A DNA stretch of 64,000 bases. Origin: Haplodiscus bocki (lineage: Eukaryota). Shown here piece after piece: positions 27,617-59,958 of the stretch (positions are counted from its first letter, which is position 1; every line of letters starts with the position of its first letter). The stretch covers positions 154,628,001-154,692,000 of the forward strand of contig OZ296648.1 of assembly GCA_965655095.1 (NCBI GenBank), read 5' to 3'. The notes under the pieces were generated by a model, which did no database searches, was not told where the DNA came from, and saw only the letters and a list, made by a program, of their open reading frames with translations. The position numbers were made by a program, and so were the translations under genes.

Positions 27617-27705
27617 AAAATTACACGCCATGGACGGATCGAACCCTAAACTTGCAGGTTAATGTGTTAAAGCCGTATCAAACAAGAGGGTCAGCTACCG
27701 CCGGC
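27617..27705 (-). ncRNA. tRNA-like putative Pol III cassette (monomer 2)
   Basis: Same cassette with intact GGTTCGATCC, TAGCTGA at the A-box position, a possible D-stem GCTG/CGGC, and T4 downstream. Confidence 0.4.
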
Positions 27706-36700: not shown

Positions 36701-39700
36701 GGCCACAATACAAGCAGTTTTTTTCAGAAAAACAACAAAACAACTCCAAGAAGACATAAAAGATTGGTTATTGAAATAACAAGACAAAAAATTTCGCGTG
36801 GAAAATACATAACGGGACTTTATTGTCTTTTTGTTGATTTTACATATTGCAAGCAAGTGAATGGGATGTAGATGGTCAAAATCCAACGAAGAATTTTCAA
36901 AAAAGTGCTTTCATTGAAAAAAACCCAGTAAAATTAACACAATTTTTAGACTAGAAGTCGATAAATTTGACTTGGAAGGTACGTGACTAAAAATCCAGCA
37001 ACTCAAATTTCTGGGGTTTTATTTAAGTGCCTGATGGTGGCAATTCAATTGGGGTTCTTCGAGCATTCAAAATCCCAAAAAATTTGCCTCCACTTTGCGG
37101 CTCAATGTTTACGAAGCTTGCGCAGTAGACAACGCGACTTGAACAAGTACCTGCCAAAAACTGCAGGTTTTGGATATTATAAAAAAATTATGCAAAAACC
37201 GATTGACGATGCACATTCCTGTTTTCAGAATATGTGGAAAAACTGGAATTTATGAGAGCGATTCTCAATGAAAAAATGATTTGATCGAATTCAGCATTAT
37301 TAACATTGCGTCAAACGCTGATAGCGTTGAAAAATACGTGATATTTCAAACTTTGCAAGAATGCAATTTGAGAGTCAACTATTTTCGAACTCGACGCAGG
37401 GTCATTGATTTGAAAAAACGGAAACTAGATTGCGTAATCCAATGACGAAAATGAGCATATTTGAGAGTACAAATTACCAATCGGATTTGAAGGAGTGACT
37501 AGCGGAGAGCGGCTTCGCACTAGTTTCGAAGGAGTGGGGGTAAAAAAAGATATGGAAACCAAGAGTGGGAATCTTTTGGGCGCCACCAGGGGTTGAAAGA
37601 CTAATTGGACTTTCCCACAATTTTATTGCGTTGAAAACTACAGTACAATCAAACGTCCAAAAACTTGAAACTCCGAAGCAATCAATGGTCTTCTGGTAAA
37701 CTTTTTTGTATTTTCAAAAAATTGCAGTATTTGGACCCGTCCCGAAACAAAAAATTCCGGATGCAATGAGCGTCACCATCTTGGAAAAGGTCGAAGAATA
37801 AGATGCGAAACATTGTGATAGTTGTGAGAAAACTGAACCTGAGTACTTGCATATTTGAGTCAAATGCTCCCACTACCACAAGTACTTGGAATCTAAGACT
37901 AAACAGTGATGCTCTCTCTAGCTTGAAGACAAGGGGTAGCAAAAACAGATAAAATAATCGACAAGCAGGTACCATTCTGATTCCCTCAAGCAATCAACCT
38001 TGCCCCATCGGTCAATCAATGGCCCTTTGGGAAGAAAAAGTAAAATCTATATGCAATAAATTTGACTTAATGCAGAAAAGAAATCATCTGAAATATTGTG
38101 ATTGCTTCGATTGGATAAGAACAAAATTTAGAATTTTTTCCGCCTTTTTTATGATAAGGAAGGAAAATCATCCTTTCAGCGCAGTCCATTGTTTTATATT
38201 CACCTGCTAGCATGTCCAGAAACCAATTCTGAATTTGAAAAACTTTCTAACACAAAAGAATAGCAAATTTGCCGTAAACCGCAAGTGATTTAGGATTTCT
38301 CAAATGGGTACGAAAACTGGGATTTTTTGAGAAATGTTTTTTTTAAGAAATTCCGGTTTTGCTCATAATCGTACCTTGCTCTCGTTACTTTTTGTCCCAT
38401 ATTCTAAGAATAGAAAATATTTCAATGGATAGTGCCGTCTTAAGTTTTCAGCATTATTTCAAATTCACTGAAAATGACGTAAAAATGTGGGCGTGAGTTC
38501 CACTGTTCGGATTCAAAAGTTACACGCCATAGACGGATCCAACCCTAAACCTGCAGGTACAAATGTTGAATCCGTATCAAACGATTGGGTCGGCTACCGC
38601 TAGCACATTTTCCGCTTTCCCCTTTTGGTAAAGATGCCTTTAAAGGAATTCAAGCGCTTTTTTTTCAAAAAACTGTCTTTTCAGTGATGGCCTAAAAACC
38701 TCACAATTAAGGTAATTGTTTTTTTTGAAAAATAATATAAATTGATATGTTTTCTGCAGCAAAATTGCTGCCGTCAATGATTTCGAAACAATTCAATTTT
38801 TTTTTTGAAAAGTCCGATCAATTTTTCAACAGAAAGCCCCATTTTTTTGTACGATTTGTGAATTGTTATATTTCCCTTCGTAATCTACGCCAAATTTGCC
38901 ATACTTAGTTGATAAGAGCTTTTCAATTTCAGAATCGTCCTAAGAGAACGAGTTCAAGGTAAAAAGAGAAAGAGACAGATATCTCGTATACCAAGAAAGA
39001 TGGTGCAGGTCAAAGAGAACAAGAGAGAAATGTTTGAAGCAAAGCACTCAAAGGCGGAAAACTACACAAACAGTCTGTGGATGAACTTTTCGAGCGCATT
39101 GTTTTTGACACAGTGGATACTAGAACCTGAACAAATTGTGACGAAACTCTCCCAAGTGACTTTTGAACGGATTGGACGAAGGTGTCGAGCGAAAAGAACC
39201 CCTAGAATCAAAGGAAAAGCTGTCTTCTTAAAATCGAAAGCGAAAAACGGATACGGCTGTCGAAATCAGCATTTTAAAAAATTGATTAGCTTGCAAATTG
39301 AAACTTGATAACTCATTTTTTAAGTCCAGTTAATCTTCTTGTTTCCTAACTTCTGTTTCAATCCGCCTGACTTTGAAGCCAAAATTACTTCTAAAACAAG
39401 TATGTTTACCGAACTCGGGGAGGGCCACAGGGTGATTTGAAAAAAAAATGCGGTATCGCTTTTGTTCTTGCCAGACACTCAAGACTTTTACTGATGTTTT
39501 TCTGATCAATTTTTGTCGAACGAGCTTTGAATATATTACTCTTTCAAACAAACTGATTTAATAAAAAATCACATAACGAACTGACAAAGAACCTTGGCAC
39601 TCAAAAGTCCTTGTTATTTTTTTTCAAACAAAAATTTAGGTTTTGATAAGAACCGGCTCAAGTTTACCTGCAAGGAATGTATTTAGCTGGGTTTCAGGGT

Positions 39701-42700
39701 TACTCCTCCCTTTTGCTTTTTGTGGGCTTTTGGACAAACACTGGATGGCCACAATACAAACAGTATTGCTTCAGAAGCACAACTCATTGAAGACAAAAAA
39801 TATTGGTGTTTGAAATTACAAGACAAAATATTTTGCGTGGAAAGTACATAACGGGACTTTACTGTCTTTCTATTGATTTTGCAAATTGCGAGCAAGTGCA
39901 TGGGATCTAGATGGTCAGAATCCAACGAATAATCTTCGAAGAAGTGCTTTCAGTGAAAAAAATCAATCAAACTAATACAACTTTGAGACTGGAAATCCAA
40001 TAACTTGGCTTGGAAGGTATGTGGTTAAAATCCAGCATCTCAATTTTTCAAGAATCGAATTTGAGAATCAACAATTTTCGAACGCATTAAGATTGCGTAA
40101 TCTATTGACAAAACTGAGCATATTTGAGAGTATAAATTACCAGTTGGAGCTGAAAAAGTGATTTGCTGAGAGTGGGTTTGCACTAGTTTCGAGAGAGCGG
40201 GGGTAAAAAACAAATAGGAACCAATAGTGGGATTCATTAGGCGCTACGAATGGTTGAAAAACCAATTGGACTTTCGCAAAATTTTATTGCGTTGGAAACT
40301 ACAGTACAATCAAACGTTCAAAAATTTGAAACTCCGAAGCAATCAATGGTCTTCTGGTAAACTTTTTTGTATTTTCAAAAAATTGCAGTTTTTGGACCCG
40401 TCCCGAAACAAAAAATTCCGGATGCAATGAGCGTCACCATCTTGGAAAAGGTCGAAGAATAAGATGCGAAACATTGTGATAGTTGTGAGAAAACTGAACC
40501 TGAGTACTTGCATATTTGAGTCAAATGCTCCCACTACCACAAGTACTTGGAATCTAAGACTAAACAGTGATGCTCTCTCTAGCTTGAAGACAAGGGGTAG
40601 CAAAAACAGATAAAATAATCGACAAGCAGGTACCATTCTGATTCCCTCAAGCAATCAACCTTGCCCCATCGGTCAATCAAGGGCCCTTTGGGAAGAAAAA
40701 GTAAAATCTATATGCAATAAATTTGACTTAATGCAGAAAAGAAATCATCTGAAATATTGTGATTGCTTCGATTGGATAAGAACAAAATTTAGAATTTTTT
40801 CCGCCTTTTTTATGATAAGGAAGGAAAATCATCCTTTCAGCGCAGTCCATTGTTTTATATTCACCTGCTAGCATGTCCAGAAACCAATTCTGAATTTGAA
40901 AAACTAACACAAAAGAATAGCAAATTTGCCGTAAACCGCAAGTGATTTAGGATTTCTCAAATGGGTACGAAAACTGGGATTTTTTGAGAAATGTTTTCTT
41001 AAGAAATTCCGGTTTTGCTCATAATCGTACCTTGCTCTCGTTACTTTTTGTCCCATATTGTAAGAATAGAAAACATTTCAATGGATAGTGCCGTCTTAAG
41101 TTTTCAGCATTATTTCAAATACACTGAAAATGACGTAAAAACGTGGGCGTGAGTTCCACCGTTCGGATTCAAAAGTCACACGCCATAGACGGATCCAATC
41201 CTAAACCTGCAGGTACAAATGTTGAATCCGTATCAAACAATTGGGTCGGCTACCGCCAGCACATTTTCCGCTTTCCCCTTTTGGTAAAGATGCCTTTAAA
41301 GGAATCCAAGCGGTTTTTTTCAAAACACATTCTTTTGAGTGATGGCCAAAAAACCTCTTAGTTAACGTGAACATCTTCTGAAAAACAATATAATTTGATG
41401 TGTTTTCTACAGCAAACTTGCTGCCGTCAGTGACTTTGAAGTAAGTCAATTCATTTTCGGAAAAAGCCGATCATTTTTTCAACAGAAAACTCCAATTTTG
41501 GAACGGTTGGAGAACTGTTACATTTTCAGCCGTATTCTACGCCAAATTTGCTATAATTAGTTTATGAGCGATTTTCAATTTCGGAATCGTCTTAAGAGAA
41601 CGAGTTCACGGTAAAAAGAGAAAGGGACAGATATCTCGTTTACCAAGAAACGTGGTGCAGGTCAAGGGGAACAAGACAGAAATACTTTAAGCAACGCACT
41701 CAAATGGGGAAAAGTACATAAAGAGTCGGTGAATGAAGTTCTCTAGCTCATTGATTTTGAGACAGTGGATCATAGAACCCGGAAAAATGTGCAGAAATTC
41801 TCTCATCAGTGACTTTTGAAGAGATTGGACGCATGTGTTGAGCGCAGAGAGCCCCTGGAATTATAGGAAGAGCTGTATTCTTATAAAATTGTAAGCGAAA
41901 AACGGCGACATTTGTCAAAATAGGCATTTGAAGAAACTGATAAGCTAGCAATTTGAGACTTGTTAACTCATTTTTTGAATCAAGTTAAATTTTTGTTTCT
42001 AAACTTCTGTTTCAATGCGCCTGACTTTGGAGCTAAAAAAACTTCTAAAACAAGCATGTTTACCGAAGTCCGGGAGGGCCACAGAGTGATTTGAAGTAGA
42101 TTTGGTATCGCTATTCTTGCTGCCAGAGACTCAATACTTCTAATGAGGTTTATCTGATTATTTTTTGTCGAAAGAGCATTGAGAAAATTACTCTTTCAAA
42201 GAAACTGATTTATCAATTTATCACATCATAATGTAACAAAAAACCTTTGCATTCGAGAGTCCTTGTGGTTTTTTTCTAACAAAAACTTAAGGTTTGATAA
42301 AATCCGGCTCAAGTTTACATGCAAGGAATGTATTTAGCTGGGTTTCCCGGCTACTCCTCCCTTTTGCCTCTTTTGTTGGCATTTGGACAAGCACTGGATG
42401 GTCATAATACAAGCAGTATTGTTTCAGAAAAACAACTCCGACAAGACATAGAAAAACGGTTTTCCAAACTGCAAGACAAGATTTTGTACGTGGAAAGAAA
42501 ATAACGGGACTTCACTGCCTTTCTGTTGATTTTGCAAATTGCGAGCAACCGACTGGGATCTAGATGGTCAGAATCCAACGAATAATCTTCGAAGAAGTGC
42601 TTTCAGTGAAAAAAATCAATCAAACTAATACAACTTTGAAACTGGAAATCCAAAAACTTGGCTTGGAAGGTATGTGGTTAAAATCCAGCATCTCACTTTT

Positions 42701-44239
42701 CTGGGATTTTGTATAAGCGCCCGATGGCGGCAATCCCACTGGTGTTTTTGAGGACTCAAAATCACAAAATATTTCTCCTCCATTTTGCTGCTGAATGTTT
42801 AGGAAGCTTGCTAGCTGCAAACAACGAAAAATTGAACAAGTGTTTGCCAAAAACTGCAAGTTTTGATTATCATAAAAGAAATTAAAGATAGGCCGGTTGA
42901 CGATGCACATTCCTGTGCTCATTCAGATTATGTGGAAAAACTGAAAATTATGCGACCGATTCTCAACCAAAAAATGATTTGATCGAATTCAGCAATAATA
43001 ACACTGAGTCAAATGCTCAATGCTTTGAGAACTACGTGATATATCAAAGCTTTCAAGATTAGAATTTGAGAATCAACAATTTTCGGACGCGACGCAGGGT
43101 CATAAATTTGAAATAGCGAAAATTAGGTTGCGTAATCCAATGACAGAACTGAGCATATTTGAGAGTTTAAATTACCATTTGGATTCGACGAAGCTAATAG
43201 CGGAGAGCAAGTTCAGACTAGTTTCGAGGGAGCGGGGTTAAATTGCTATAGGAACCAATAGTGGGATTCATTAAGCGCTGGGAATGGTTGAAAAACCAAT
43301 TGGACTTTCGCACAATTTTTTTGCGTTGAAAACTACAAAACAATCAAACGTCCAAATTTTTTGAAACTCTGAAGCAATCAATGGTCTACTGCTAAACTTT
43401 TTTGTTTTTTGAAAAAACTGCAGTTTTTGGACCTGTCTGGAAACAAAAAATTCCGGATGCAATGAGCGTCACCATCTTGGAAAAGGTCGAAGAATAAGAT
43501 GCGAAACATTGTGATAGTTGTGAGAAAACTGAACCTGAGTACTTGCATATTCGAATCGGTGCTCCCACCACTACAAGTCTATGGAATCTAAGACTAAACA
43601 GTGACGCACTCTCTAGCTTGGAGGACAAGGGAAAGTAAAAACAGATAAAACAAAAGACAAACAGGTACCATTCTGATTCACTCAAGCAATCAGCCTTGCC
43701 CCGTCGGTCAATCAAGGGCCGTTTGGGAAGTGAAAGTAAAATCTATTTGCAATAAATTTGACTGATTGCAGGAAAAAATTTTTTCTGAAGTATTGTGATT
43801 GCTGCGATTTGAAGAGAGCAAAACTTATATTTTTTTCCGCCTTTTTTTATGATAAGGAAGGAAAATCATCCTTTCAGCGCGGTCCGTTTTTTTAAATTCG
43901 TTTGCCAGCATTACCAGAAAACAATTCTGAATTCGAAAAACTTTTAACACAAAATAATAGCAAATTTGCTGTAAAATGCAATTGATTTAGTAGGATTTCT
44001 CAAATGGGTACGAAAACTGGGACTTTTAGAGAAAAAATCATTTTTGGAAGAAATCTGGTTTTCCTTATTGGAAGAAATCTGGTTTTCCTTAAAAATGAAC
44101 ATTGCTCTCGTTACTTTTTTGTCCAGTTTCTAAGAATAAAAATATTTTATTGGGCAGCGCCGTTTTGAGTTTTCAGGAAATTTTCCAATTCATTAAAAGT
44201 GACTTAAACTTGCGGGCGTGAACTTTACCATTCAGATGC

Positions 44240-44329
44240 AAAAATTACACGCCGTAGACGGATCGAACCCTAAACCTACAGGTTCGAAAGTTGAAGCCGT
44301 ATCCAACGAGAAGGTAGGCTACCGCCGGC
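44240..44329 (-). ncRNA. tRNA-like putative Pol III cassette (monomer 8)
   Basis: Same cassette with intact GGTTCGATCC and a T5 run. Confidence 0.4.
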
Positions 44330-47300
44330 ACATTCTCCGCTTTCCCATTTTGGTAAAGATGCCTTTAAAGGAAAGCAAGCGGTTTTTTTCAAAACACTCT
44401 CTTCTGAGTGAGGGCCAAAAAAGCTCATAATTTAACCGAACGTTTTCTTTAAGGACAATATAAAGCATTGTTTTTTATAAAAAGTTGCCACAATCAATGA
44501 TTTTTAAGCAATTCAGTTTATTTTTTAAAAAAAATCGATCAATTTATTAACAGAAAACCCCAATTTTTGTACGGTTTGTGAAATGTTACACCTTCATTCG
44601 TATTCTACGCCAAACTTCTATAATTAGTTGATGGGAGCTTTTCATTATCAGAATCGTCTTAAGAGAACGAGTTCAAGGTAAAAAAAAGAAAAAGACAGAT
44701 CTCTCGTATAGCAAGAAAGATGATGCAGGTCAAGAAGAACAAGAGACATAAACTTGAAGCAAAGCACTCAAATGGGAAAAAATACATAAAGAGTCCGTGA
44801 ACGAACTTTTCGAACTCCATGAATTTGAGACAGTGGACACTGGAACCCTAAAAAATTGTGCAGAAGTTCTCTCATCAGTGACTTTTGAAGAGATTGAACG
44901 AAGTTGTTGAGCGCAAAGAGCCCCTGGAATCATAGAAAAAACTATCTTTTTAAAAAATCGAAAACGAAAATCGGAGACAATTGTCAAATTTAGCATTTGG
45001 AAAAACTGTTAGGCAAGCAACTTCAAATTTGTTAGCTCATTTTTTGAGTCCAGTGAAACTTTTTTTAATAAACTTCTGTTTTAATGCGCCTGACTTTGAT
45101 GCAAAAAACTAATTCTAAAACAAATATGTTTACCGAATTCAGAGAAGGCCACAGAGTGATTTGAAATAGATTTGGTATCGCTATTGTTACTGCCAGACAC
45201 TCAGTACTATTACTGAGGTTTTTCCTATTAAATCTTGTCGAACGACAATTGAGAACGTTACTTTTTCAGACAAACTGCTTTGAAAAAATATCACAGAAAA
45301 AAGTGACAAAAAACCTTTGCACAGGAAAGTCTTTGTTGTTTTTTTTCCTAACAAATTACAAAATTTGGTAGAATGCAGCTCAAGTTTACCTGCAAGGAAA
45401 GTATTTAGCTGGGTTTCACGGCTATTCCTCCCTTTTGTCTTGTTGTGGGCTTTTGGACAAGCAGTGGATCTCCACAATACAAGCAGTATGGTTTCAGAAA
45501 CGCAACTTCTAGAAGACATAAAAGAACGGTATTTGAAATCACAAGACAAGATAGTTTGCGTGGGAAGTACATAACGGGACACTACTGCCTTTCTGTTGAT
45601 TTTGCAAATTGCTAGCAATTGCCTGGGATCTAGATGGTCAGATCGCAACGAATAATTTTCGAAAAAGTGTTTTTAGTTTGAAAAAAAGGCCAGAAAAACT
45701 AACAAAAATTTGAGACTAGAAGTCCATAGATTTGGCTTGGAATGCATGTGACTAAAGGTCCAGCATCTCATTTTTCTGGCATTTTCTATAAGCGCCTGAT
45801 GGCGGCAATCCAATTGGTGTTTTTTGGGAACCCAGAATCACAAAATTATTGGTCTCCATTTTGCTGCTGAACCTTTAGGAAGCTTGCTAGCAGCACACAT
45901 TGGAAAATTGAAAAAGTAAATGCTGAAAACTGCAACTTTTGAATGTTGTAAAAGAAATTAAGTATAGGCCGTATAGGCCAGTTGATGATGCACATTCCTG
46001 TTGTTTTTCAGACTTTGTGGACCAACTGGTGTTTATGAAACCGATTCTCAGTGACAAAAAAATGATTTGATCCAATTCAGCAATTCTCACAATACGTCAA
46101 ACACTCAGAGCGTTGAGAATTACGTGACATTTCAAAAGCTTCGAGAAAGGAAACTGAGAGTCGACAATTTTTGGACGGGACGAAGGGTCATCATTTTGAA
46201 AAAACTATCATCAAGGTGCATATTCTAATCACAAATTCAAGCATATTTGAGAGAATCAATTACCAGTTGGTGTCAAAAAAGCGAATGGCGAAGAGTGGGT
46301 GTGGACTAGATTTGAGTGAGTGAGAGCAAAGAAGACATTGGACCAATGGTACGAGTCTTTAAGCGCTACGAATGTTTAAAAAACTGATTGGACTTTCGCT
46401 AAAAGATATTGCGTTGAAAGCTACAAACTAATCGAACGTCCCAACTTCTGATATTTCGCAGCATTCAATGGTCTGCTCGTAAAAGTTTTATGTTTTGGAA
46501 AAATTGCAGTTCTTGGCCCCTTCAGGAATCAAAATAGTTTTGGACGCAATGAGTGGTCACAATCTTGGAAAACAGCCGAAAATAAGATGCGATTAAATTT
46601 GACAATTATGAGGAAACTGAATCTGAGTACTTGCATATTTGAATTGAAGCTCCCAACGCCACAATCGCTAAAATCTAAGACTAAACATTGACGCTTTTAG
46701 CATGGGGGACAAAAGATAGCAAAAACAGATAAAATAATCGACAAGCAGGTACCATTCTGATTCTCTCAAGCAATCAGCCTTGCCCTGTTGGTCAATCAGT
46801 GGCCGTTTGGGAAGAAAAAGTAAAATCTATATGCAATAAATTTGACTGAATGCCGAAAAAAATCATCTGAAATATTGTGATTGCTTCGATTGGAAAAGAA
46901 CAAAATTTAGAATTTTTTCCGCCTTTTTTATGATAAGGAAGGAAAATCATCCTTTCAGCGCGAACCGTTTGTTTTACATTCACCTGCTAGCATGTCCAGA
47001 AACCAATTCTGAATTTGAAAAACTTTTTAACACAAAATATTAGCAAATTTGCCGTAAACTGCAAGTGAATTAGGATTTCTCAAATTGGTACGAAAACTGG
47101 GATTTTTTGAGAAAAAATGTTTTTTTTTAAGAAATTCCGGTTTTGCTTATAATCGTACCTTGCTCTGGTTACTTTCTGTCCCTTATTGTAAGAATAGAAA
47201 ACATTTCAATGGATAGTGCCGTCTTAAGTTTTCAGCATTATTTCAAATTCACTGAAAATGACGTAAAAATGTGGGCGTGAGTTCCACCGTTCGGATTCAA

Positions 47301-48734
47301 AAGTCACACGCCATAGACGGATCCAACCCTAAACCTGCAGGTACAAATGTTGAATCCGTATCAAACATTTGGGTCGGCTACCGCCAGCACAATTTCCGCT
47401 TTCCCCTTTTGGTAAAGATGCCTTTAAAGGAATCCAAGCGCTTTTTTTCAAAACACACTTTTGAGTGATGGCCAAAAAACCTCCTAGTTAACGTGAACAT
47501 CTTCTGAAAAACAATATAATTTGATGTGCTTTCTACAGCAAACTTGCTGCCGTCAGTGACTTTGAAGTAAGTCAATTCATTTTCGGAAAAAGCCGATCAT
47601 TTTTTCAACAGAAAACTCCAATTTTGGAACGGTTGGAGAACTGTTACATTTTCAGCCGTATTCTACGCCAAATTTGCTATAATTAGTTTATGAGCGATTT
47701 TCAATTTCGGAATCGTCTTAAGAGAACGAGTTCACGGTAAAAAGAGAAAGGGACAGATATCTCGTTTACCAAGAAACGTGGTGCAGGTCAAGGGGAACAA
47801 GACAGAAATACTTTAGGCAACGCACTCAAATGGGGAAAAGTACATAAAGAGTCGGTGAATGAAGTTCTCGAGCTCATTGATTTTGAGACAGTGGATCATA
47901 GAACCCGAAAAAATGTGCAGAAGTTCTCTCATCAGTGACTTTGAAGACATTGGACGAAGTTGTCGACCGCAAAGAGCCCCGGGATTTATGGGAAAAGCTG
48001 TCTTCCTAGAAAATCGAAAGCGAAAAACGGAGACAACTGTCGCAATTAGCATTTGAAAAAAACTGATTAGCTAACAACTTGAAACTTGTTAACACTTTTT
48101 TGAGTCAAGTTAACCTTTTTGTAAGTAATCTTCCGTTTTAATGCGCCTGATTTTGAGGCAAAAAATTACTTCTAAAACAAGTATGTTTTACTGAATTCAG
48201 AGAGGGCCACAGATTGATTTGAAATAGATTTGGTATCGCTTATGTTGCTGCCAAACACTCAGTACTACTAGTGAAGTTTTTCTGATTAGTTGTTGTCGAA
48301 CGAGCATTGAGATTAACTTTCTTTCAAACAAATTGATTTAAAAAAATATCGCTTAACAAAGTGAAAAAAAACCTTTGCACTCGGAAATCCTTGTTGTTTT
48401 TTTCTTATAAAACTACAAAATTTGATGAAATATGGTTCAAGTTAACGTGCAAGGAACGTATTTAGCTGGGTTTCACGGCGATTCCTCCCCTTTTGTCTCG
48501 TTGTGGGCTTTTGGACAAGCAGTGGATTTCCACAGTACAAGCAGTATGGTTTCAGAAACGGAACTTCTAGAAAACAAAAAGAACGGTTTTTGAAATCACA
48601 AGACAAGACAGTTTGCGTGGGAAGTACATAACGGGACAATACTGCCTTTCTGTTGATTTTGCAAATTGCGAGCAACCGACTGGGATCTAGATGGTCAGTA
48701 CCGAACGAATAATCTTCGAAAAAGAGCTGTCAGT

Positions 48735-51700
48735 GAAAAAAGCCAGAAAAACTAACACAAGTTTGAGACTAGGCGTCCATATAATTAGTTCAGCTGCTAT
48801 AAAACTGAAAATCCAGCATCCCAAGTTTTTGGGATTTTGAATGAGCATCTGATGGCGGCAATCCAGTTTGTTTTTTGAGAACTCAAAATCACAGCACAAT
48901 TGGCCTCCATTTTGCCGCTGAACGTTTAGGAATCTTGCTACCAGCAAACAACGAAAAATTGTACAAGTGCTTGCCAAAAACTGCAAGTTTTGAAAATTAT
49001 AAAAGAAATTAAGTAAAAGCCGGTTGACGAGGCACGTTCCTGTTTTTTCTTCAGATTCTGTGGAAAAACTGGAATTTATGAAACCGGTTCTCAATAAAGA
49101 AAAATGATTTGATGCAATTCAGAACAATTTACATTGCGTCAAACATCTAGAGCCTTGAGAATTAAGTGAAATTTCAAAATATTCAAGGATGGAATATATG
49201 AGTTAACTTTTTTCGGACCCGACGAAGGGTCATCTTTCTGAAAAAGAGAATATTAAGGTGCGTATTCTAATGACAAATCTGAGCACAATTGAGAGTATCA
49301 ATTACTAGTTGGAGTCGAAGAAGTGAATAGCGGAGAGTGAGTTCGGAGTAGCTACGAGCGAGCGGGAGTAGAAAAGACATAGTAACCAATGGTGCGAGTC
49401 ATTAAGCGCTACGGTTAAAAACCAATTGGACTTTCGAAAAATGACTTTGCGTTGAAAATTGCCAACTAATGAAACGTCCAATTTTTTTGATATTTCGCAG
49501 CATTCAATGGTTTACTCGTTTACGAAGTTTTGGAAAAAATTCAGTTCTTGGACCCTTCAGGAATCAACTTTTTTTGGACGCAATGAGTGGTCACCATCTT
49601 GGAAAACAGCCGAAAATAGGATGCGATTAAATGTGATCGTGAAGAAACTGAATCTGAATACTTGCATATTTGAACCGAAGCTCGCACCACCACAAGTAAT
49701 TGGAATCTACGACTAAACAGTGACGCTCTTTCTAGCTTGGGGGACAAAGGAAAGTAAAAACAGATGAAGTAAACAACAAGGAGGTGCCATTCAGGTTCAC
49801 TCTAGCAATCAGCTTTGCCCAGTCCGTCAATCACGGGTCGTTCGCAAAGAAAAAGTAAAATCTATACGCTTTAAGTTTAACTGATTGCCGAAGAAAATTC
49901 ATTTGAAAGATTGTGATTGTTTCGATTTGAAAATAGCTAAATTGATAATTTCCGCTAACATTTTTGATAAAGGAAGAAAATCATCATTTCTCCGCGATGC
50001 GTTTCTTTCACGTTCCCTTGCAAGCATGGCCGGAAGACGATTCTGAATTGGAGTGTTTGACACCAATTGATAGCAAATTTGCCGTATAATGCGATTGAAT
50101 TAGTAAGATTTCTCAAATGGGCATAAACTTGGGGTTTTTCTCAAAATCGTACTTTAATCTTGAAACTTTTTGTCCCATACTGTAAAATTAGAAAAAATTT
50201 CAACGGATGGTGCCGTTTTAAATTTTCAGGCAATTTGCCAATTCACTGAAAGTGACGTTAATTTGAAAGAGTGAAATTTACCTTTCGGATGCAAAAATTA
50301 CACGCCATAGAGGGAGCGAACCCTCAACCTGCAGGTTAATATGTTGCAGCCTTATCAAGCAAGAGAGTCGGCTACCTCCGGCACATTTTCCTCTTCCCCA
50401 TTTTGGTAAAGATGCCTCTAAAAGAATGCAAGCGGTCTTTTTCCAAAACACTTTCCTTTGCGTGAGGGCTAAAAAACCTCACAATTAACGTGAACATTTG
50501 TTGAAAAAGTACAATTTGATATGCGTTCTACAGCAAACCTGCTGCCATCAGTGACTTTAAAACAAGTCAATGTGTTTATCGAAAAATCCCATCTATTTTT
50601 TCAACAGAAAACCCCAAATTTCTAAGGTTTGGAGAAATCCTACAATTTCAGTCCTATTCTACGCCAAATTTGCTTGATTTTGTTTTTGAGAAGTTTTCAA
50701 ATTCAGACTGGACTTAGTTGGACAATTTCAAGGTAAAAAGAAAAGGACAGATACCTCATTTATCAAAAAAAATGGTGCAGGTCAAGGGGGAACAAGAGAG
50801 AAATGTTTGAAGCAAAGCACTCAAATGGGGAAAAGTACAAAGAGTCGTTTCAAGAACTTTTCCGAGCTCGTTGAATTTGAGACAGTGGGTCCCAGAACCC
50901 GAACAAATAGTGCGGAGTTCTGCCACCAGTAACTTTTGAAAAGAGATTGGACGAAGTTGTCGAGCGCAAAGAGCCCCTGGAACCATAGGAAAAGCTACCT
51001 TCTTATAAAATTGAGAGCGAAAAGCGGAGACAACTGTCAAAATTAGCATTTGAAAAAACTGATAATCTAGCAAAATGAAACTTGTCAACTCATTTTTTGA
51101 GTCAAGTTAAACTTTTTGTGTCTGAACTTCTGTTTCAATGCGCCTGAAATTGGAGCTAAAACACTTCAAAAACAGGTCTGTTTACCGAATTCGGGGATAA
51201 ACACCGACTGATTTGAAATAGATTTGGTATCGCTATTGTTGCTGCCAGACACTCAGTACTTTTACTGAGGTTTTTCCGATTAATTCTTGTCGAACGACAA
51301 TTGAGAACGTTACTTTTTCGTCGAACGAGCATTGAGATTTTTAATCTTGCAAACAAACTGATTTTTAAAATTATCACATAACAAAGTGACAAAAAACCTA
51401 TGCTCTCGAAAGTCCTTGAGGCTTTTTTTAAAAAAAAACTACAAGTTTTGATAAAACGCGGCTCAAGTTTACCTGCAAGGAATGAATTTAGCTGGGTTTC
51501 AGAGCTAGTCCTACCTTTTGTCTTTTCTTTGGCATTTGGAAAAGCACTGGATGGCCACAATACAACCAGTTTTTTTTTCAGAAGAACAACATAACAACTC
51601 CAAGGAGACATAAAAGAATGGTTACTGAAATAACAAGACAAAATATTTTGCGTGGAAAGTACATAACGGGACTTCACTGAATTTCTGTCGGTTCTGCATA

Positions 51701-54700
51701 ATGCGAGCAACTGAATGGGGTCTAGATGGCCAGAAGCCAACGAATATTCTTCGACAAAACGCTTTTACTGAAAAAAAGCCAGAAAATCATATACAAAGTT
51801 GAGACTACTAGTCCATATATTTGGCGTGGAAATTATGTGACTGAAAATCCAGCATCTTAATTTTTGGGGATTTCGAATGAGCGCCTGATGACGGCAATCC
51901 AATTTGTTTTTTTTCTGGGAACTCAATCACAAATTAATTAGCCTTAATTTTGCTGCTCAATGTTGAGGAAGCTTGCGCAGCAAACAACGGAAAATTGAAC
52001 AAGTACTTGCCAAAAACTGCAAGTTTTGAAAATTATAAAAGAAATTAAGCAAAAGCCGGTTGATCATCCACATTCCCGTTTTCTTTCAGACTATGTGAAA
52101 AAACAGGAGGTTGTGAACTCGATTCTCAATGAAAATGATTTGATCGAAATCGCCAATATTCACATTGCGTCAAACACTCAGAGCGTTGAAAATTACGTGA
52201 CATTTCAAAATTTTCAAGAAAGGAAATTGAGAGTCGACAAATTTCGGACGCGACAAAGGGTCATCTTTTTCAAAAAGCGAACATTCAGGTGCGTATTCGA
52301 ATGACAAATTTAAGCGTATTTGAGAGTATCAGTTACCAGTTGGAGTCGAAAAAGTGAAAAGCGAAGAGTGGGTTCGGACTAGTTTTGAGTGAGCGGGAGA
52401 GAAAAACATAGAAACCAATGGTGCGAGTCGATAAGCGCTAAGAATGGTTAAAAAACCAATTGCAATTACGCAAAAGGATATTGCGTTGAAAACTACAAAC
52501 TAATCAAACGTCCAGGAATTCGAAATTTCGACGCATTCATTGGTCTACTGGTAAATTCTCTTGTTTTAAAAAAGTTGCAGTTTTTAGACCCTTCAGGAAT
52601 CAATTTTTTTTGGACGCAATGTGTAGTCACAATCTTAGAAAAAAGCCGAAAGTAAGATGCGAATCATAGTGACAGTTCTGAGAAGACTGTATCTCAGTAG
52701 TTGCATATTCGAATCGAAGCTCCTACTACAACAAGTTCCTGGAATCGGAGACTAAACGGTGACGCCCTCTCTATCTTGAGGGACGAGGGAAAGTAAAAAC
52801 AGATGAAGTAAACAACAAGGAGGTGTCATTCAGGTTCACTCTAGCAATCAGCTTTGCCCAGTCCGTCAATCACGAGCCGTTTGCTAAGAAAAAGTAAAAT
52901 CTATACCTCTGAAGTTTGACTGATTGCCGAATAAAAGTCATTTGATACATTGTGATTGTTTCGACTTGATAATAGCTAGAACTACATTCTCCGTTTACCT
53001 TTTTGATATGGAAAATCATCAATTCTGCGCGATGCGTTTCTTTTACGTTTCCTTGTCAGCATGGCCGGCAGGCGATTCTGAATTGAAAATCAAAACAATT
53101 TATAACAAATTTGACGTATAATACGACCAATTTATTTAGTAGGGTTTTTCAAGTGGGTACGAAAAATGTGGTTTCTCAAAAAAGGATCTCGTTTTTTTTT
53201 CAAAAAATCCGATTTTTCTCAAAATCGCACTTTAATATTGTTACTTTTTGTTCCATACTGTAAAATTAGAATTTAATTTAAGGGCTGGTACCGTTTTGAA
53301 TTTTTAGGAAATTTGCCAACTCTCTGAGAGTGACGTAAATATACGGGCGTAAAAATTACCTTTCGGATGCAAAAATTACACGCCATGGACGTACCGAACC
53401 CTCAATTTTCAGGCTCATATGTTGAAGCCTTATCTTGCAAGAGGATCGGCCACTGCTTGGAAGTTTTTCGTATTCCCATTTTGGATTCTCCCATTCTCAT
53501 TATGTCTTCAAATGAATCCAAGCGTTTTTTTCGAAACACTCTTTTGAGTGATGGCCAAAAAACCTCTGAGTTAACGTGAACATCTTTTGAAAAACAATAT
53601 AATTTGATGTGCTTTCTACAGCAAACTTGCTGCCGTCAATGACTTTGAAGTAAGTCAATTTATTTTCGGAAAAAGCCGATCATTTTTTCAACAGAAAACT
53701 CCAATTTTGGAACGGTTGGAGAACTGTTACATTTTCAGCCGTATTCTACGCCAAATTTGCTATAATTAGTTTATGAGCGATTTTCAATTTCGGAATCGTC
53801 TTAAGAGAACGAGTTCACGGTAAAAAGAGAAAGGGACAGATATCTCGTTTACCAAGAAACGTGGTGCAGGTCAAAGGGAACAAGACAGAAATACTTTAAG
53901 CAACGCACTCAAATGGGGAAAAGTACATGAAGAGTCGGTGAATGAAGTTCTGGAGCTCATTGATTTTGAGACAGTGGATCATAGAACCCGAAAAAATGTG
54001 CAGAAGTTCTCTCATCAGTCACTTTGAAGACATTGGACGAAGTTGTCGACCGCAAAGAGCCCCTGAAATCATCGGAAAAGCTGTCTTCCTAAAAAATCGA
54101 AAGCGAAAAACGGAGACAACTGTCGCAATTAGCTTTTGAAAAAAAACTGATTAGCTAGCAACTTGAAACTTGTTAACTCATTTTCTGAGTCAAGTTAAAC
54201 TTTTTGTTTGTAAACTTCCATTTCAATGCGCCTGATTTTGAGGCAAAAAATTACTTCTAAAACAAGTATGTTTTACTGAATTCAGAGAGGGCCACAGATT
54301 GATTTGAAATAGATTTGGTATCGCTTATGTTGCTGCCAAACACTCAGTACTACTAGTGAAGTTTTTCTGATTAGTTGTTGTCGAACGAGCATTGAGATTA
54401 ACTTTCTTTCAAACAAATTGATTTAAAAAAATATCGTCTAACAAAGTGAAAAAAAACCTTTGCACTCGGAAATCCTTGTTGTTTTTTTCTTATAAAACTA
54501 CAAAATTTGATGAAATAAGGCTCAAGTTAACGTGCAAGGAAAGTATTCAGCTGGGTTTCACGGCTATTCCTCCCTTTTGTTTTGTCGGGGCTTTTGGACA
54601 AGCAGTGGATCCCCACAAAACAAGCAGTAAGGTTTCAGGAACACAACTTCTAGAAGACATAAAAGAATGATTTTTGAAATTACAATAAAAGATAGTTTGC

Positions 54701-57700
54701 GTGGGAAGTGCATAACGGGACGTTACTGCCTTTCTGTTGATTTTGCAAATTGCGAACAATTGGCTGAGATCTAGATGGTCAGAACCCAACGAATAATCTT
54801 CGAAAATTGCTCCCAGTGAAAAAAGCCAGAAAAACTAACACAAGTTTGAGACTAGGCGTCCATATAAATAGTTCAGCTGCTATAAAACTGAAAATCCAGC
54901 ATCCCAAGTTTTTGGGATTTTGAATGAGCGTCTGATGGCAGCAATCCAGTTTGTGTTTTTTGAGAACTCGAAATCACAGCACAATTGGCCTCCATTTTGC
55001 CGCTGAACGTTTAGGAATCTTGCTACCAGCAAACAACGAAAAATTGAACAAGTGCTTGCCAAAAACTGCAAGTTTTGAAAATTATAAAAGAAATTAAGGA
55101 AAAGCCGGTTGGCGAGGCACGTTCCTGTTTTTTCTTCAGATTCTGTGGAAAAACTGGAATTTATGAAACCGGTTCTCAATGAAGAAAAACGATTTGATGC
55201 AATTCAGAACAATTTACATTGCGTCAAACATCTAGAGCCTTGAGAATTAAGTGAAATTTCAAAATATTCAAGGATGGAATATATGAGTTAACTTTTTTCG
55301 GACCCGACGAAGGGTCATCTTTCTGAAAAAGAGAATATTAAGGTGCGTATTCTAATGACAAATCTGAGCACAATTGAGAGTATCAATTACTAGTTGGAGT
55401 CGAAGAAGTGAATAGCGGAGAGTGAGTTCGGAGTAGCTACGAGCGAGCGGGAGTAGAAAAGACATAGTAACCAATGGTGCGAGTCATTAAGCGCTACGGT
55501 TAAAAACCAATTGGACTTTCGAAAAATGACTTCGCGTTGAAAATTGCCAACTAATGAAACGTCCAATTTTTTTGATATTTCGCAGCATTCAATGGTTTAC
55601 TCGTTTACGAAGTTTTGGAAAAAATTCAGTTCTTGGACCCTTCAGGAATCAACTTTTTTTGGACGCAATGAGTGGTCACCATCTTGGAAAACAGCCGAAA
55701 ATAGGATGCGATTAAATGTGATCGTGAAGAAACTGAATCTGAATACTTGCATATTTGAACCGAAGCTCGCACCACCACAAGTAATTGGAATCTACGACTA
55801 AACAGTGACGCTCTTTCTAGCTTGGGGGACAAAGGAAAGTAAAAACAGATGAAGTAAACACCAAGGAGGTGCCATTCAGGTTCACTCTAGCAATCAGCTT
55901 TGCCCAGTCCGTCAATCACGGGTCGTTCGCAAAGAAAAAGTAAAATCTATACGCTTTAAGTTTAACTGATTGCCGAAGAAAATTCATTTGAAAGATTGTG
56001 ATTGTTTCGATTTAAAAATAGCTAAATTGATAATTTCCGCTAACATTTTTGATAAAGGAAGAAAATCATCATTTCTCCGCGATGCGTTTCTTTCACGTTC
56101 CCTTGCAAGCATGGCCGGAAGACGATTCTGAATTGGAGTGTTTGACACCAATTGATAGCAAATTTGCCGTATAATGCGATTGAATTAGTAAGATTTCTCA
56201 AATGGGCATAAACTTGGGGTTTTTCTCAAAATCGTACTTTAATCTTGAAACTTTTTGTCCCATACTGTAAAATTAGAAAAAATTTCAACGGATGGTGCCG
56301 TTTTAAATTTTCAGGCAATTTGCCAATTCACTGAAAGTGACGTTAATTTGAAAGAGTGAAATTTACCTTTCGGATGCAAAAATTACACGCCATAGAGGGA
56401 GCGAACCCTCAACCTGCAGGTTAATATGTTGCAGCCTTATCAAGCAAGAGAGTCGGCTACCTCCGGCACATTTTCCTCTTCCCCATTTTGGTAAAGATGC
56501 CTCTAAAAGAATGCAAGCGGTCTTTTTCCAAAACACTTTCCTTTGCGTGAGGGCTAAAAAACCTCACAATTAACGTGAACATTTGTTGAAAAAGTACAAT
56601 TTGATATGCGTTCTACAGCAAACCTGCTGCCATCAGTGACTTTAAAACAAGTCAATGTGTTTATCGAAAAATCCCATCTATTTTTTCAACAGAAAACCCC
56701 AAATTTCTAAGGTTTGGAGAAATCCTACAATTTCAGTCCTATTCTACGCCAAATTTGCTTGATTTTGTTTTTGAGAAGTTTTCAAATTCAGACTGGACTT
56801 AGTTGGACAATTTCAAGGTAAAAAGAAAAGGACAGATACCTCATTTATCAAAAAAAATGGTGCAGGTCAAGGGGGAACAAGAGAGAAATGTTTGAAGCAA
56901 AGCACTCAAATGGGGAAAAGTACAAAGAGTCGTTTCAAGAACTTTTCCGAGCTCGTTGAATTTGAGACAGTGGGTCCCAGAACCCGAACAAATAGTGCGG
57001 AGTTCTGCCACCAGTAACTTTTGAAAAGAGATTGGACGAAGTTGTCGAGCGCAAAGAGCCCCTGGAACCATAGGAAAAGCTACCTTCTTATAAAATTGAG
57101 AGCGAAAAGCGGAGACAACTGTCAAAATTAGCATTTGAAAAAACTGATAATCTAGCAAAATGAAACTTGTCAACTCATTTTTTGAGTCAAGTTAAACTTT
57201 TTGTGTCTGAACTTCTGTTTCAATGCGCCTGAAATTGGAGCTAAAACACTTCAAAAACAGGTCTGTTTACCGAATTCGGGGATAAACACCGACTGATTTG
57301 AAATAGATTTGGTATCGCTATTGTTGCTGCCAGACACTCAGTACTTTTACTGAGGTTTTTCCGATTAATTCTTGTCGAACGACAATTGAGAACGTTACTT
57401 TTTCGTCGAACGAGCATTGAGATTTTTAATCTTGCAAACAAACTGATTTTTAAAATTATCACATAACAAAGTGACAAAAAACCTATGCTCTCGAAAGTCC
57501 TTGAGGCTTTTTTTAAAAAAAAACTACAAGTTTTGATAAAACGCGGCTCAAGTTTACCTGCAAGGAATGAATTTAGCTGGGTTTCAGAGCTAGTCCTACC
57601 TTTTGTCTTTTCTTTGGCATTTGGAAAAGCACTGGATGGCCACAATACAACCAGTTTTTTTTTCAGAAGAACAACATAACAACTCCAAGGAGACATAAAA

Positions 57701-58877
57701 GAATGGTTACTGAAATAACAAGACAAAATATTTTGCGTGGAAAGTACATAACGGGACTTCACTGAATTTCTGTCGGTTCTGCATAATGCGAGCAACTGAA
57801 TGGGGTCTAGATGGCCAGAAGCCAACGAATATTCTTCGACAAAACGCTTTTACTGAAAAAAAGCCAGAAAATCATATACAAAGTTGAGACTACTAGTCCA
57901 TATATTTGGCGTGGAAATTATGTGACTGAAAATCCAGCATCTTAATTTTTGGGGATTTCGAATGAGCGCCTGATGACGGCAATCCAATTTGTTTTTTTTC
58001 TGGGAACTCAATCACAAATTAATTAGCCTTAATTTTGCTGCTCAATGTTGAGGAAGCTTGCGCAGCAAACAACGGAAAATTGAACAAGTACTTGCCAAAA
58101 ACTGCAAGTTTTGAAAATTATAAAAGAAATTAAGCAAAAGCCGGTTGATCATCCACATTCCCGTTTTCTTTCAGACTATGTGAAAAAACAGGAGGTTGTG
58201 AACTCGATTCTCAATGAAAATGATTTGATCGAAATCGCCAATATTCACATTGCGTCAAACACTCAGAGCGTTGAAAATTACGTGACATTTCAAAATTTTC
58301 AAGAAAGGAAATTGAGAGTCGACAAATTTCGGACGCGACAAAGGGTCATCTTTTTCAAAAAGCGAACATTCAGGTGCGTATTCGAATGACAAATTTAAGC
58401 GTATTTGAGAGTATCAGTTACCAGTTGGAGTCGAAAAAGTGAAAAGCGAAGAGTGGGTTCGGACTAGTTTTGAGTGAGCGGGAGAGAAAAACATAGAAAC
58501 CAATGGTGCGAGTCGATAAGCGCTAAGAATGGTTAAAAAACCAATTGCAATTACGCAAAAGGATATTGCGTTGAAAACTACAAACTAATCAAACGTCCAG
58601 GAATTCGAAATTTCGACGCATTCATTGGTCTACTGGTAAATTTTCTTGTTTTAAAAAGTTGCAGTTTTTAGACCCTTCAGGAATCAATTTTTTTTTGGAC
58701 GCAATGTGTAGTCACAATCTTAGAAAAAAGCCGAAAGTAAGATGCGAATCATAGTGACAGTTCTGAGGAGACTGTATCTCAGTAGTTGCATATTCGAATC
58801 GAAGCTCCTACTACAAGTTCCTGGAATCGGAGACTAAACGGTGACGCTCTCTCTATCTTGAGGGACGAGGGAAAGTA
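48735..58877 (+). repeat. Higher-order (dimer) duplication, period 6,085 bp
   Basis: Identical ORF translations at offset 6085: 49459/55544, 49541/55626, 50756/56841, 51156/57241, 51400/57485 and 52026/58111. Confidence 0.95.
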
Positions 58878-59040
58878 GAAAAAAGAGTAAAGTAAACAAC
58901 AAGCAGGTACCATTTAGGTTCACTCTAACAATAAACCTTGCCCAGTCGGTCAATCACAGGCCGTTGGCGAAGAGAATGTAAGTTCTATATTGCCGACTAA
59001 AATTTATTTGAAACCTTGTGATTGTTTCCATTTGAAAATA

Positions 59041-59958
59041 GCTAAATTTATATTATATTCCGCCTATATTTATGATAAGGAAAGAAAATTATCCTTTCAG
59101 CGCGGTGCGTTTGTTTCACGTTCACTTGCCGGCACGGCCGGAAGACAATTCTGAATTTCAAATTTTTTCAACACAAAATTGAAGTAAGTTTGCCCTATAA
59201 TTCGCCTCAAATAGTAGGATTTCTCAAATGGGTACGAAAGTTGGGGTTTTCCAAAAAAAAGTTGGGTGTTGCTTGAAAAAATCCTATTTTTTTTTCAAAA
59301 TCGTACTTTGCTCTTGTTACTTCGTCCGAAATTGCAAAAGTAGAAAATAATTTATTGCATAAAGCCGTTTTACTTTTTCAGGAAATTTTGCGAATTATCT
59401 AAAAGTGACTTGAAATTGCGGGCGTGAATTTTACCTTTCGGATGCAAAAATTACACGCCATAGACGGATCGAACCCTCAAACTGCAGGTTAATATGTTGC
59501 AGCCTTATCAAGCAAGAGGGTCGGCTACCGCCGGCACATTTTCCGCTTTCCCATTTTGGTAAAGATGCCTTTAAAAGAATCCAAGCGCTTTTTTTTCAAA
59601 ACATTATTTTTTGAGTGAGGGCCAAAAAACCTCACAATTAACGTGAACGTTTTTTCAAAAAACAATATAACTTGATATGCTTTCTACAGCAAATTTGCTA
59701 CCTTCAGTGATTTTGAAACAATTCATTTTTCAAAGAATCTCATTTTTTTTCAACAGAAAACCCCAATTTTTGAACGTTTTGAGAAATCTTAATTTGTCGT
59801 ATTCTACGGCAAATTTGCTATCAAATTTGTAATGTCCTGGTCAGAACCAGAGACAAGTGTCAATTGGCAAGTGAGCGTGAAAAAACGTCGGATTTGATCG
59901 TTTTGAGTGAATTATTTTCCTTCCAAATTGTAAATATGCCCGGAAAATATCAATTGTA
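59041..59958. mobile_element. Complete ~920-bp foldback/MITE-like element with ~200-bp imperfect TIRs, ending the array
   Basis: The right arm ...ttctacggcaaatttgcta...tggcaagtgagcgtgaaaaaacg...attttccttcc...ccggaaaatatcaatt is inverted to the left-arm consensus gctaaattkata..ttccgcc...ggaaggaaaatcatcc...cgtttttttacgttcacttgcca...tagcaaatttgccgta. Confidence 0.75.
59446..59535 (-). ncRNA. tRNA-like or SINE-head-like putative Pol III cassette (monomer 13)
   Basis: Minus strand: GCCGGCGG TAGCCGA ccctcttgcttgata AGGC tgcaac atattaa cctgc agttt gag GGTTCGATCC gtctatGGCG tgtaa TTTTT. This gives an A-box-like motif, a B-box and a T5 terminator. The T-stem and acceptor stem are imperfect. Confidence 0.45.

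What the first reader, a model, noticed from the sequence alone, without database searches (positions are those of the whole stretch)
59041..59958. Monomer junction lies inside the right arm of the foldback element, and only the last copy is complete
Seen: in internal monomers the inverted match stops at ...cagaatcgtctt and the next monomer begins (aagagaacgagttc; e.g. 25377, 28034, 41593, 44660). In monomer 13 the right arm continues ~100 bp further (tggcaagtgagcgtgaaaaaacg...attttccttcc...ccggaaaatat), mirroring the outer left arm. Monomer 1 begins without a clear arm. Inference: the founding duplication broke within the palindrome arm, pointing to a hairpin/cruciform-initiated or rolling-circle origin.
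Basis: partly seen in the sequence, partly recalled or inferred. Interest (0 to 1): 0.7.

Follow-up and report, generated by a model that had tools for sequence, protein, structure and literature searches.

The report
Tandem array breakpoint inside a transposon copy
A 13-copy, 3-kb tandem repeat was founded by a duplication whose right breakpoint fell inside an old transposon copy, so only the last repeat keeps that copy's final 100 bases; this is ordinary and does not point to a hairpin or rolling-circle origin.

Summary
The window (a 1.5-Gb animal-like genome) has 13 head-to-tail monomers of about 3 kb at 22364-59848. All 12 internal junctions share one breakpoint. Only monomer 13 continues about 100 bp further (59849-59950), and that stretch mirrors the outer left arm (0 of 2000 shuffles reach the score).

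The "920-bp foldback element" is not one element. It is two copies of a dispersed 440-510-bp repeat, here called R, with more than 4000 first-look candidates genome-wide. One copy is inverted and partial (59046-303) and one is full (59513-950). They flank about 200 bp found only in this array.

Solo R copies have a single arm, are nearly all full length, and none ends at "cgtctt". R has the layout of HINE/DINE-1-type non-autonomous rolling-circle elements.

The two arms match each other no better (60-69%) than they match unrelated R copies (63-72%), and about 405 nt separate them. The left breakpoint lies in unique DNA. All monomers are direct repeats.

Best reading: an ordinary non-homologous tandem duplication with one breakpoint inside a transposon copy, later expanded and patchily homogenised by unequal exchange. 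A hairpin, cruciform or rolling-circle origin is unsupported but not strictly excluded. Interest is low.

This junction had not been reported before.

The parts
22364..59848 (+). Tandem array of 13 head-to-tail monomers. Starts: 22364, 25378, 28035, 29835, 32832, 35872, 38942, 41594, 44661, 47720, 50715, 53803, 56800. Lengths 2.65-3.09 kb; monomer 3 is 1.8 kb.
   Evidence: Self-BLAST. Junction alignment. Monomer identity matrix 75-98%.
22347..22368 (.). Left edge of the array. Homology to the monomer heads starts here, and the DNA to its left (22108-22367) is unique in the genome.
   Evidence: The junction profile aligns from 22368, with its envelope from 22347. No R hit in 22080-22520. 22108-22420 has no other genome match.
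53793..53816 (+). Example internal junction (monomer 11 to 12): the truncated R copy ends ...GAATCGTCTT and the next monomer head begins AAGAGAACGAGTTC. The same breakpoint occurs at all 12 junctions.
56800..59848 (+). Monomer 13, the last copy. Its first ~2 kb are about 100% identical to monomer 11; its R region is at most 90% like any other monomer.
58487..58976 (.). A second, unrelated dispersed repeat present in each monomer.
   Evidence: Genome matches cover only query 1684-2177 of 56800-59040.
59046..59303 (+). Left arm: a partial copy of R (profile 475 down to 221), inverted relative to the right copy. In R's own 5'-to-3' sense it lies on the + strand, keeps the 5' end and lacks the 3' half.
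   Evidence: nhmmer 59303-59056, minus relative to the profile, E=3e-35. 5'-end motif.
59304..59512 (.). Array-specific centre between the two R copies. It has only 12 copies in the genome, all inside this array.
59513..59950 (-). Right arm: a full-length copy of R (profile 3-474). R's own 5' end is at 59950 and its 3' hairpin end is near 59513.
   Evidence: nhmmer E=6e-94. Alignment with 10 solo copies. Termini.
59849..59950 (.). Outer ~100 bp of the right R copy (profile ~376-476), kept only in the last monomer. It is the undisturbed continuation of the pre-duplication locus.
   Evidence: Contigs spanning 59764-60282 with 0 differences. 59950-60243 is unique flank.
29698..29834 (.). Monomer 3 remnant. 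The outer ~80 nt of the left arm are joined at 29772/29773 to the last ~60 nt of the truncated right arm, with ~700 bp of interior deleted.

Best explanation
Proposed history:
1. Two copies of an abundant non-autonomous transposon (R, HINE/DINE-1-like) inserted independently, in opposite orientation, about 200 bp apart in single-copy DNA. The left copy is, or became, truncated.
2. A later tandem duplication of about 3 kb joined a point inside the right R copy (about 100 nt from its outer end) to unique DNA about 3 kb upstream. No extended homology was involved, so this was end-joining or a replication template switch.
3. Every later monomer inherited that one junction.
4. Unequal crossing-over and gene conversion raised the copy number to 13 and left a mosaic of identical patches.
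5. The last monomer simply runs on into the untouched remainder of R and the original flank.

Shown: the anatomy, the single shared junction, the family membership of both arms, the unique left breakpoint, and the mosaic. Inferred: the repair pathway and the order of amplification steps.
For: - One colinear junction in all 12 cases.
- R direct copies stop at profile 374-378 internally and at 474 in monomer 13.
- Sixteen of the solo copies examined span profile 1-2 to 474-475, and none ends near 375.
- The centre and the 1.7-kb monomer head are found nowhere else in the genome.
- The left flank has no R and is unique.
- Monomer heads are not R tail: z from -1.8 to +1.7 against shuffles.
- Arm-arm identity is 60-69%, arm-solo 63-72% and solo-solo 75%.
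- There is no inverted monomer.
- Patches of 100% identity between non-adjacent monomers sit on a background that is 20-24% diverged, and a recent 6-kb dimer duplication links monomers 10-11 to 12-13.
- There is no conserved ORF, codon periodicity or Pfam domain.
- Both the edge and a junction are confirmed in short-read contigs.
Against: - The exact breakpoint cannot be read to the base after ~22% divergence. About 43 nt before the junction align confidently to neither edge with the junction profile.
- In monomers 10 and 12 nhmmer extends R weakly to profile 418.
- A contribution of the inverted repeat to the break cannot be excluded from one locus. As single strands the arms do pair (z=-7.9 and -5.1).
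- A second rearrangement in the array, the monomer 3 deletion, also has both ends in the arms.
Confidence: 0.78

Rival explanations
1. One reading: the inverted repeat formed a hairpin or cruciform. That structure caused the break or fork stall which founded the duplication, so the breakpoint lies in the arm for a mechanistic reason.
For: The breakpoint is inside the right arm. The arms pair end to end in single-strand folds, z=-7.9. The monomer 3 deletion removes the interior of the inverted repeat with both ends in the arms.
Against: - The arms are now 60-69% alike. My rough back-calculation puts them at 75-87% at founding (inference).
- About 405 nt separate the arms.
- In yeast, instability of inverted repeats in double-stranded DNA drops about 300-fold when the spacer grows from 12 to 100 bp, and is lost at 75% homology. 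In single-stranded DNA the product is an inverted dimer (PMC10164571). Here all copies are direct.
- The break is neither at the loop nor at the stem base.
- The arms make up about 15% of the unit, so a chance hit is not unlikely.
Confidence: 0.1
2. A ~3-kb extrachromosomal circle was excised with the junction, amplified by rolling-circle replication, and reintegrated by homologous recombination at its own locus.
For: It would give the same end structure: one junction type, with the last copy continuing into the flank. The genome is rich in rolling-circle transposons (at least 147 Helitron_like_N matches).
Against: - Sequence cannot tell this apart from ordinary duplication plus unequal exchange.
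- Monomer identities range from 75 to 98% with nested recent duplications, which indicates stepwise growth rather than one burst.
- The only "goes back 3068" joint in the reads is a paralogue mapping artefact: 75 of 79 bases identical between 56421-56499 and 59489-59567.
- The junction is not at an R terminus, so R's own rolling-circle machinery is not implicated.
Confidence: 0.05
3. Non-allelic homologous recombination between two direct R copies flanking the unit created the duplication.
For: A weak R-like fragment lies upstream in the same orientation, at 21863-22078, E=2.5e-5.
Against: That fragment ends ~290 bp before the array. 22108-22367 is unique and absent from the internal junctions. 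The internal junction holds a truncated R, not a hybrid full-length one.
Confidence: 0.03
4. Each 3-kb monomer is itself a mobile rolling-circle element, and the array is a head-to-tail train like others reported in this genome.
For: The junction carries CGTCTT, as does the R 3' terminus (CGTCTTGTT). Earlier notes on this genome describe Helitron-like trains.
Against: The 1.7-kb head and the centre occur nowhere else in the genome. The last monomer continues colinearly into the rest of R instead of ending at the supposed terminus.
Confidence: 0.02

Closest known systems
Locus-specific tandem segmental duplication arrays (macrosatellite-like), grown by unequal crossing-over and gene conversion
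   Same: Kilobase-sized direct monomers. One shared founding junction. The terminal copy continues into the flank. Edge monomers are the most diverged. Converted patches form a mosaic. No coding signal.
   Different: The background divergence (20-24%) is unusually deep alongside patches of 100% identity. The unit is built partly from three transposon fragments.
HINE / DINE-1-like non-autonomous Helentrons (Thomas et al. 2014, PMC4067079)
   Same: For the R family: 440-510 bp and non-coding. An 11-nt inverted repeat (TATTTTCCGCC) sits 1 nt from the 5' end and its partner 26 nt from the 3' end. A short GC palindrome lies ~9 nt from the 3' end. Both termini are TT. There is no target-site duplication. 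Head-to-tail abutting copies occur.
   Different: The 3' inverted repeat is closer to the end than the 38-60 nt reported for the mite families. The hairpin is intact in only 5 of 16 decayed copies. No autonomous partner sharing the termini was identified here. Earlier notes attribute a GIY-YIG/SLX1-type nuclease, rather than the Helentron endonuclease, to this genome's Helitron-like elements (not checked here).
Foldback (FB-type) transposons and long-TIR MITEs
   Same: Two ~250-nt inverted arms around a non-repeated centre. As single strands they fold arm to arm.
   Different: The composite is not found anywhere else. The centre is array-specific. The arms are not closer to each other than to unrelated family members. 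One arm is a partial copy and the other a full copy of a one-armed element.
Palindrome- or inverted-repeat-induced rearrangements (Alu inverted repeats in yeast, PMC10164571)
   Same: An inverted transposon pair lies at a rearrangement breakpoint, and a second deletion is bounded by the arms.
   Different: The spacer is ~405 nt and the arms 60-69% identical. The product is a direct tandem duplication, not an inverted dimer. The partner breakpoint is in unrelated unique DNA.

Membership tests
Tandem segmental duplication array | Direct head-to-tail monomers that all share one junction | tested here: met
   The 12 junctions are colinear. There are no inverted monomers.
Tandem segmental duplication array | The terminal copy continues colinearly into pre-existing flank sequence, and the first copy starts in unrelated flank | tested here: met
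   R profile 3-474 is contiguous in monomer 13. The left flank is unique and has no R.
Tandem segmental duplication array | The unit is locus-specific, not a dispersed mobile unit | tested here: met
   The head (56800-58480) and the centre (59296-59512) match only within the array.
Foldback transposon / long-TIR MITE (the 920-bp composite) | The composite (arm-centre-arm) recurs as a unit elsewhere in the genome | tested here: not met
   Outside the array no hit covers query 264-465, and solo copies are one-armed.
Foldback transposon / long-TIR MITE (the 920-bp composite) | The arms of one element are more alike to each other than to other family members | tested here: not met
   Arm-arm identity is 60-69% against 63-72% for arm-solo.
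HINE / DINE-1-like non-autonomous Helentron (the R family) | Subterminal inverted repeats of about 12-15 bp, a few nt from the 5' end and tens of nt from the 3' end | tested here: met
   An 11-nt repeat is complementary at 9 or more of 11 positions in 12 of 16 full copies. It sits 1 nt from the 5' end and 26 nt from the 3' end. Criteria are from PMC4067079.
HINE / DINE-1-like non-autonomous Helentron (the R family) | A short palindrome 8-35 nt from the 3' terminus | tested here: inconclusive
   Most copies read GCCGG-N6-CCGGC about 9 nt from the end, but a perfect stem of 4 bp or more survives in only 5 of 16.
HINE / DINE-1-like non-autonomous Helentron (the R family) | T-rich or TT termini, insertion within TT, no target-site duplication | tested here: inconclusive
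   The first two nt are TT in 13 of 16 copies and the last two are TT in 16 of 16. There is no consistent duplication of 2-8 nt. No empty site was examined.
HINE / DINE-1-like non-autonomous Helentron (the R family) | An autonomous Rep/helicase element sharing the same termini | not tested
Cruciform- or hairpin-induced rearrangement | Highly similar arms with a short spacer | tested here: not met
   The arms are 60-69% identical and ~405 nt apart. Thresholds are from PMC10164571.
Cruciform- or hairpin-induced rearrangement | Inverted (fold-back) duplication product, or a break at the stem tip or base | tested here: not met
   All monomers are direct. The break lies ~100 nt from the outer end and ~150 nt from the inner end of the arm.

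The most novel reading that the evidence does not exclude
The inverted pair of rolling-circle-type elements acts as a weak fragile site. It stalled replication and seeded both the founding tandem duplication and the later monomer 3 deletion. If so, inverted HINE-like pairs in this repeat-rich genome would be a recurrent source of kilobase tandem arrays.
Probability: 0.1. Interest if true: 0.4.

Novelty: new member of a known kind. Interest (0 to 1): 0.15.

Why it matters
The main value is as a correction. What reads as a foldback element with a telling junction is a chance inverted pair of an abundant transposon, cut by an ordinary duplication breakpoint. That removes a candidate "hairpin-born" or "rolling-circle-born" satellite.

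Two by-products may be useful:
- A defined, abundant HINE-like family (R), with its termini, for annotating this genome.
- A dated example of a noncoding 3-kb array that keeps exchanging identical patches despite 20-24% background divergence.

Tried and rejected
1. Monomer heads as a diverged R tail. By eye they looked similar, and nhmmer extends to profile 418 in monomers 10 and 12. Local-alignment scores against 11 R tails do not differ from shuffles, with z from -1.8 to +1.7. Rejected. This leaves up to ~17 nt of uncertainty in the breakpoint.
2. An R copy hidden in the left flank. nhmmer with --max and E<=100 on 22080-22520 found nothing.
3. tRNA or a known RNA in the element. ARAGORN found 0 and Rfam 0.
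4. Coding potential of the monomer. No Pfam hit for the longest ORFs. No ORF is conserved across monomers and substitutions show no 3-periodicity.
5. TRF finds no array because the period exceeds 500.
6. Linking R to an autonomous Helitron-like partner.
7. A circle-like joint in the reads ("goes back 3068"). It is explained by a contig end laid on the 95%-identical paralogous stretch.
8. A words search of earlier findings found nothing.

Full report
**What is there.** The window is G000:C1:154628001-154692000 of a 1.5-Gb, 36% GC eukaryotic genome. Self-comparison shows one repeated block at 22367-59824, all on the same strand. It consists of 13 head-to-tail monomers starting at 22364, 25378, 28035, 29835, 32832, 35872, 38942, 41594, 44661, 47720, 50715, 53803 and 56800. 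Monomers are 2.65-3.09 kb, except monomer 3 at 1.8 kb. TRF misses the array because its period limit is 500.

**The observation.**
- The 12 internal junctions align colinearly, so they all descend from one founding junction.
- In monomer 13 the sequence continues for about 100 bp (59849-59950) where internal monomers switch to the next head.
- That extra stretch aligns with the reverse complement of the outer left arm (59041-59150). The score is 38 against a shuffle mean of 15.2 and sd of 2.4, and 0 of 2000 shuffles reach it.
- Monomer 1 has no arm in front of it.
- Contigs from short-read runs of two samples (one study, possibly the assembly's own source) cover 59764-60282 and 56500-56904 without a difference. 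The right edge and a junction are therefore not assembly artefacts.

**What the "foldback element" is.** A genome search with 59041-59958 gave more than 4000 first-look candidates.
- The dispersed copies match only 59505/59513-59949. On the other strand, the same DNA matches the left arm.
- An alignment of ten solo copies with flanks defines a discrete element of 440-510 bp, which I call R.
- A profile built from those ten copies, with the window excluded, finds two R pieces in every monomer. One is an inverted partial copy (profile ~220-475) and one is a direct copy. The direct copy ends at profile 374-378 of 476 in internal monomers and reaches 474 in monomer 13.
- Sixteen solo copies are full length (profile 1-2 to 474-475), and none ends near 375.
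- The ~200 bp between the two copies (59296-59512) has only 12 copies in the genome, all in this array.
- The first 1.7 kb of the monomer also occurs only here.

So the composite is not a mobile foldback element. It is two R insertions in opposite orientation around local DNA.

The two arms of one monomer are 60-69% identical over shared profile columns. Each arm is 63-72% identical to unrelated solo copies, and solo copies are 75% identical to one another. Nothing suggests the arms were copied from each other. Inverted and direct R neighbours also occur at other loci (L020, L023), so the family tends to cluster.

**What R is.** In its own orientation, R is on the minus strand for the right copy and on the plus strand for the left copy.
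- R begins TTATTTTCCGCC.
- An 11-nt inverted partner (GGCGGAAAATA) lies 26 nt from the 3' end.
- A short GC palindrome (GCCGG-N6-CCGGC) follows it.
- R ends CGTCTTGTT.
- Both ends are TT in 13 and 16 of 16 copies respectively.
- There is no consistent target-site duplication.
- Some copies abut head to tail, sharing the TT (L016, L024).

This is the architecture described for HINE/DINE-1-like non-autonomous Helentrons (PMC4067079). The genome holds at least 147 Helitron_like_N matches with open frames up to about 2,780 aa. I could not fetch full elements to compare termini, so the assignment rests on architecture only. I put it at about 65%.

**Where the breakpoints lie.**
- Right: inside the direct R copy at profile ~375, which is about 59848 in monomer 13. 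That is ~100 nt from R's outer end and ~150 nt from the inner limit of the inverted homology.
- BLAST and the junction profile lose monomer 13 at 59821-59841 because of indels in a variable part of R.
- Left: at 22347-22368, in DNA that is unique in the genome and has no R homology.
- I tested whether the monomer heads might be a diverged R tail, which would move the breakpoint or imply recombination between R copies. Scores do not differ from shuffles.
- A weak R-like fragment at 21863-22078 ends ~290 bp before the array. The intervening DNA is absent from internal junctions. Homologous recombination between R copies is therefore rejected.

**Mechanism.** The simplest account is a non-homologous tandem duplication (end-joining or template switching) of a ~3-kb segment whose right end happened to fall inside R. 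Unequal exchange then expanded it.

Later history is visible in the array:
- Most monomer pairs are 75-85% identical.
- Monomers 10-11 and 12-13 are a recent ~6-kb duplication (97.6% and 93% identical).
- Many 250-bp windows are 100% identical between non-adjacent monomers, for example 2/10, 2/7, 1/7 and 11/13. The array is a conversion mosaic.
- The monomers carry no conserved ORF, no codon-periodic substitution and no Pfam domain.

That the last copy alone is "complete" follows from the geometry of any tandem duplication.

**The hairpin, cruciform and rolling-circle inference.**
- In favour: as single-stranded DNA the arms pair (z=-7.9 for monomer 13 and -5.1 for monomer 11). Monomer 3 also carries a ~700-bp deletion whose ends lie in the two arms.
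- Against, from the arms: they are separated by ~405 nt and are only 60-69% alike now. My rough back-calculation from monomer and family divergence gives 75-87% at founding (inference).
- Against, from yeast data: instability of inverted repeats in duplex DNA falls about 300-fold between 12- and 100-bp spacers and vanishes at 75% homology. Interaction in single-stranded DNA yields inverted dimers (PMC10164571). This array is purely direct.
- Against, from position: the break is at neither the tip nor the base of the potential stem. The arms make up about 15% of the unit, so a chance hit is unremarkable.
- A circle plus rolling-circle route cannot be told apart by sequence. The wide range of monomer ages argues for stepwise growth.
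- The one circle-like joint in the reads is a paralogue artefact.
- R's own rolling-circle transposition is not implicated, because the junction is not at an R terminus. The monomer is not a mobile unit.

**Verdict.** The break is in the arm, but the foldback is a chance inverted pair and the mechanistic inference lacks support. This is an ordinary tandem array with a transposon-internal breakpoint, so novelty and interest are low. The HINE-like family definition and the conversion mosaic are the reusable by-products.

Noticed in passing
window 22364-59848: The monomers form a mosaic. Many 250-bp windows are 100% identical between non-adjacent monomers (2/10, 2/7, 2/6, 1/7, 5/6, 11/13, 10/12) on a background that is 20-24% diverged. 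This means either very recent gene conversion or duplication among old paralogues, or local assembly collapse.
   Followed up: partly
window 29698-29834 (monomer 3): A ~700-bp deletion joins the outer left arm to the end of the truncated right arm at 29772/29773, removing the interior of the inverted repeat. Monomer 3 also lacks the equivalent of about 58021-58744.
   Followed up: partly
window 25378-28034 and 38942-41593 (monomers 2 and 7): Both monomers are 2.65 kb and share the same ~420-bp deletion, equivalent to about 57950-58375 of monomer 13. They are 100% identical over about 1.5 kb.
   Followed up: no
window 59446-59535: This is the stretch another note calls a tRNA-like Pol III cassette. 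ARAGORN and Rfam find no tRNA there. Its right part (59513-59535) is the 3'-terminal hairpin region of the R copy, and its left part is array-specific spacer with a B-box-like GGTTCGATCC on the minus strand.
   Followed up: partly
L016:1499-2086, L024:1333-2277, L020:1-576, L023:399-1926: R copies often sit head to tail with nothing between them (...CGTCTTG-TT-ATTTTCC...) or in mixed-orientation clusters. This resembles the Helitron-like trains that earlier notes report for this genome.
   Followed up: partly
G000:C3:133.75-134.31 Mb; also C9:18.6-19.0 Mb, C1:134.8-135.0 Mb, C23: Helitron_like_N hits with open frames of 1,800-2,780 aa recur about every 15 kb. These look like long tandem trains of large rolling-circle elements.
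   Followed up: no
window 60244-60700: A younger dispersed repeat of ~450 bp lies 300 bp beyond the array, with 2163 first-look candidates at 80-87% identity.
   Followed up: no
window 58487-58976 and 21837-22107: A second old dispersed repeat sits inside every monomer (matches 67-74% identical). A weak R-like fragment lies ~290 bp upstream of the array.
   Followed up: partly
window 3956-4117: A run of 162 N (assembly gap or masked stretch). It was left untouched.
   Followed up: no
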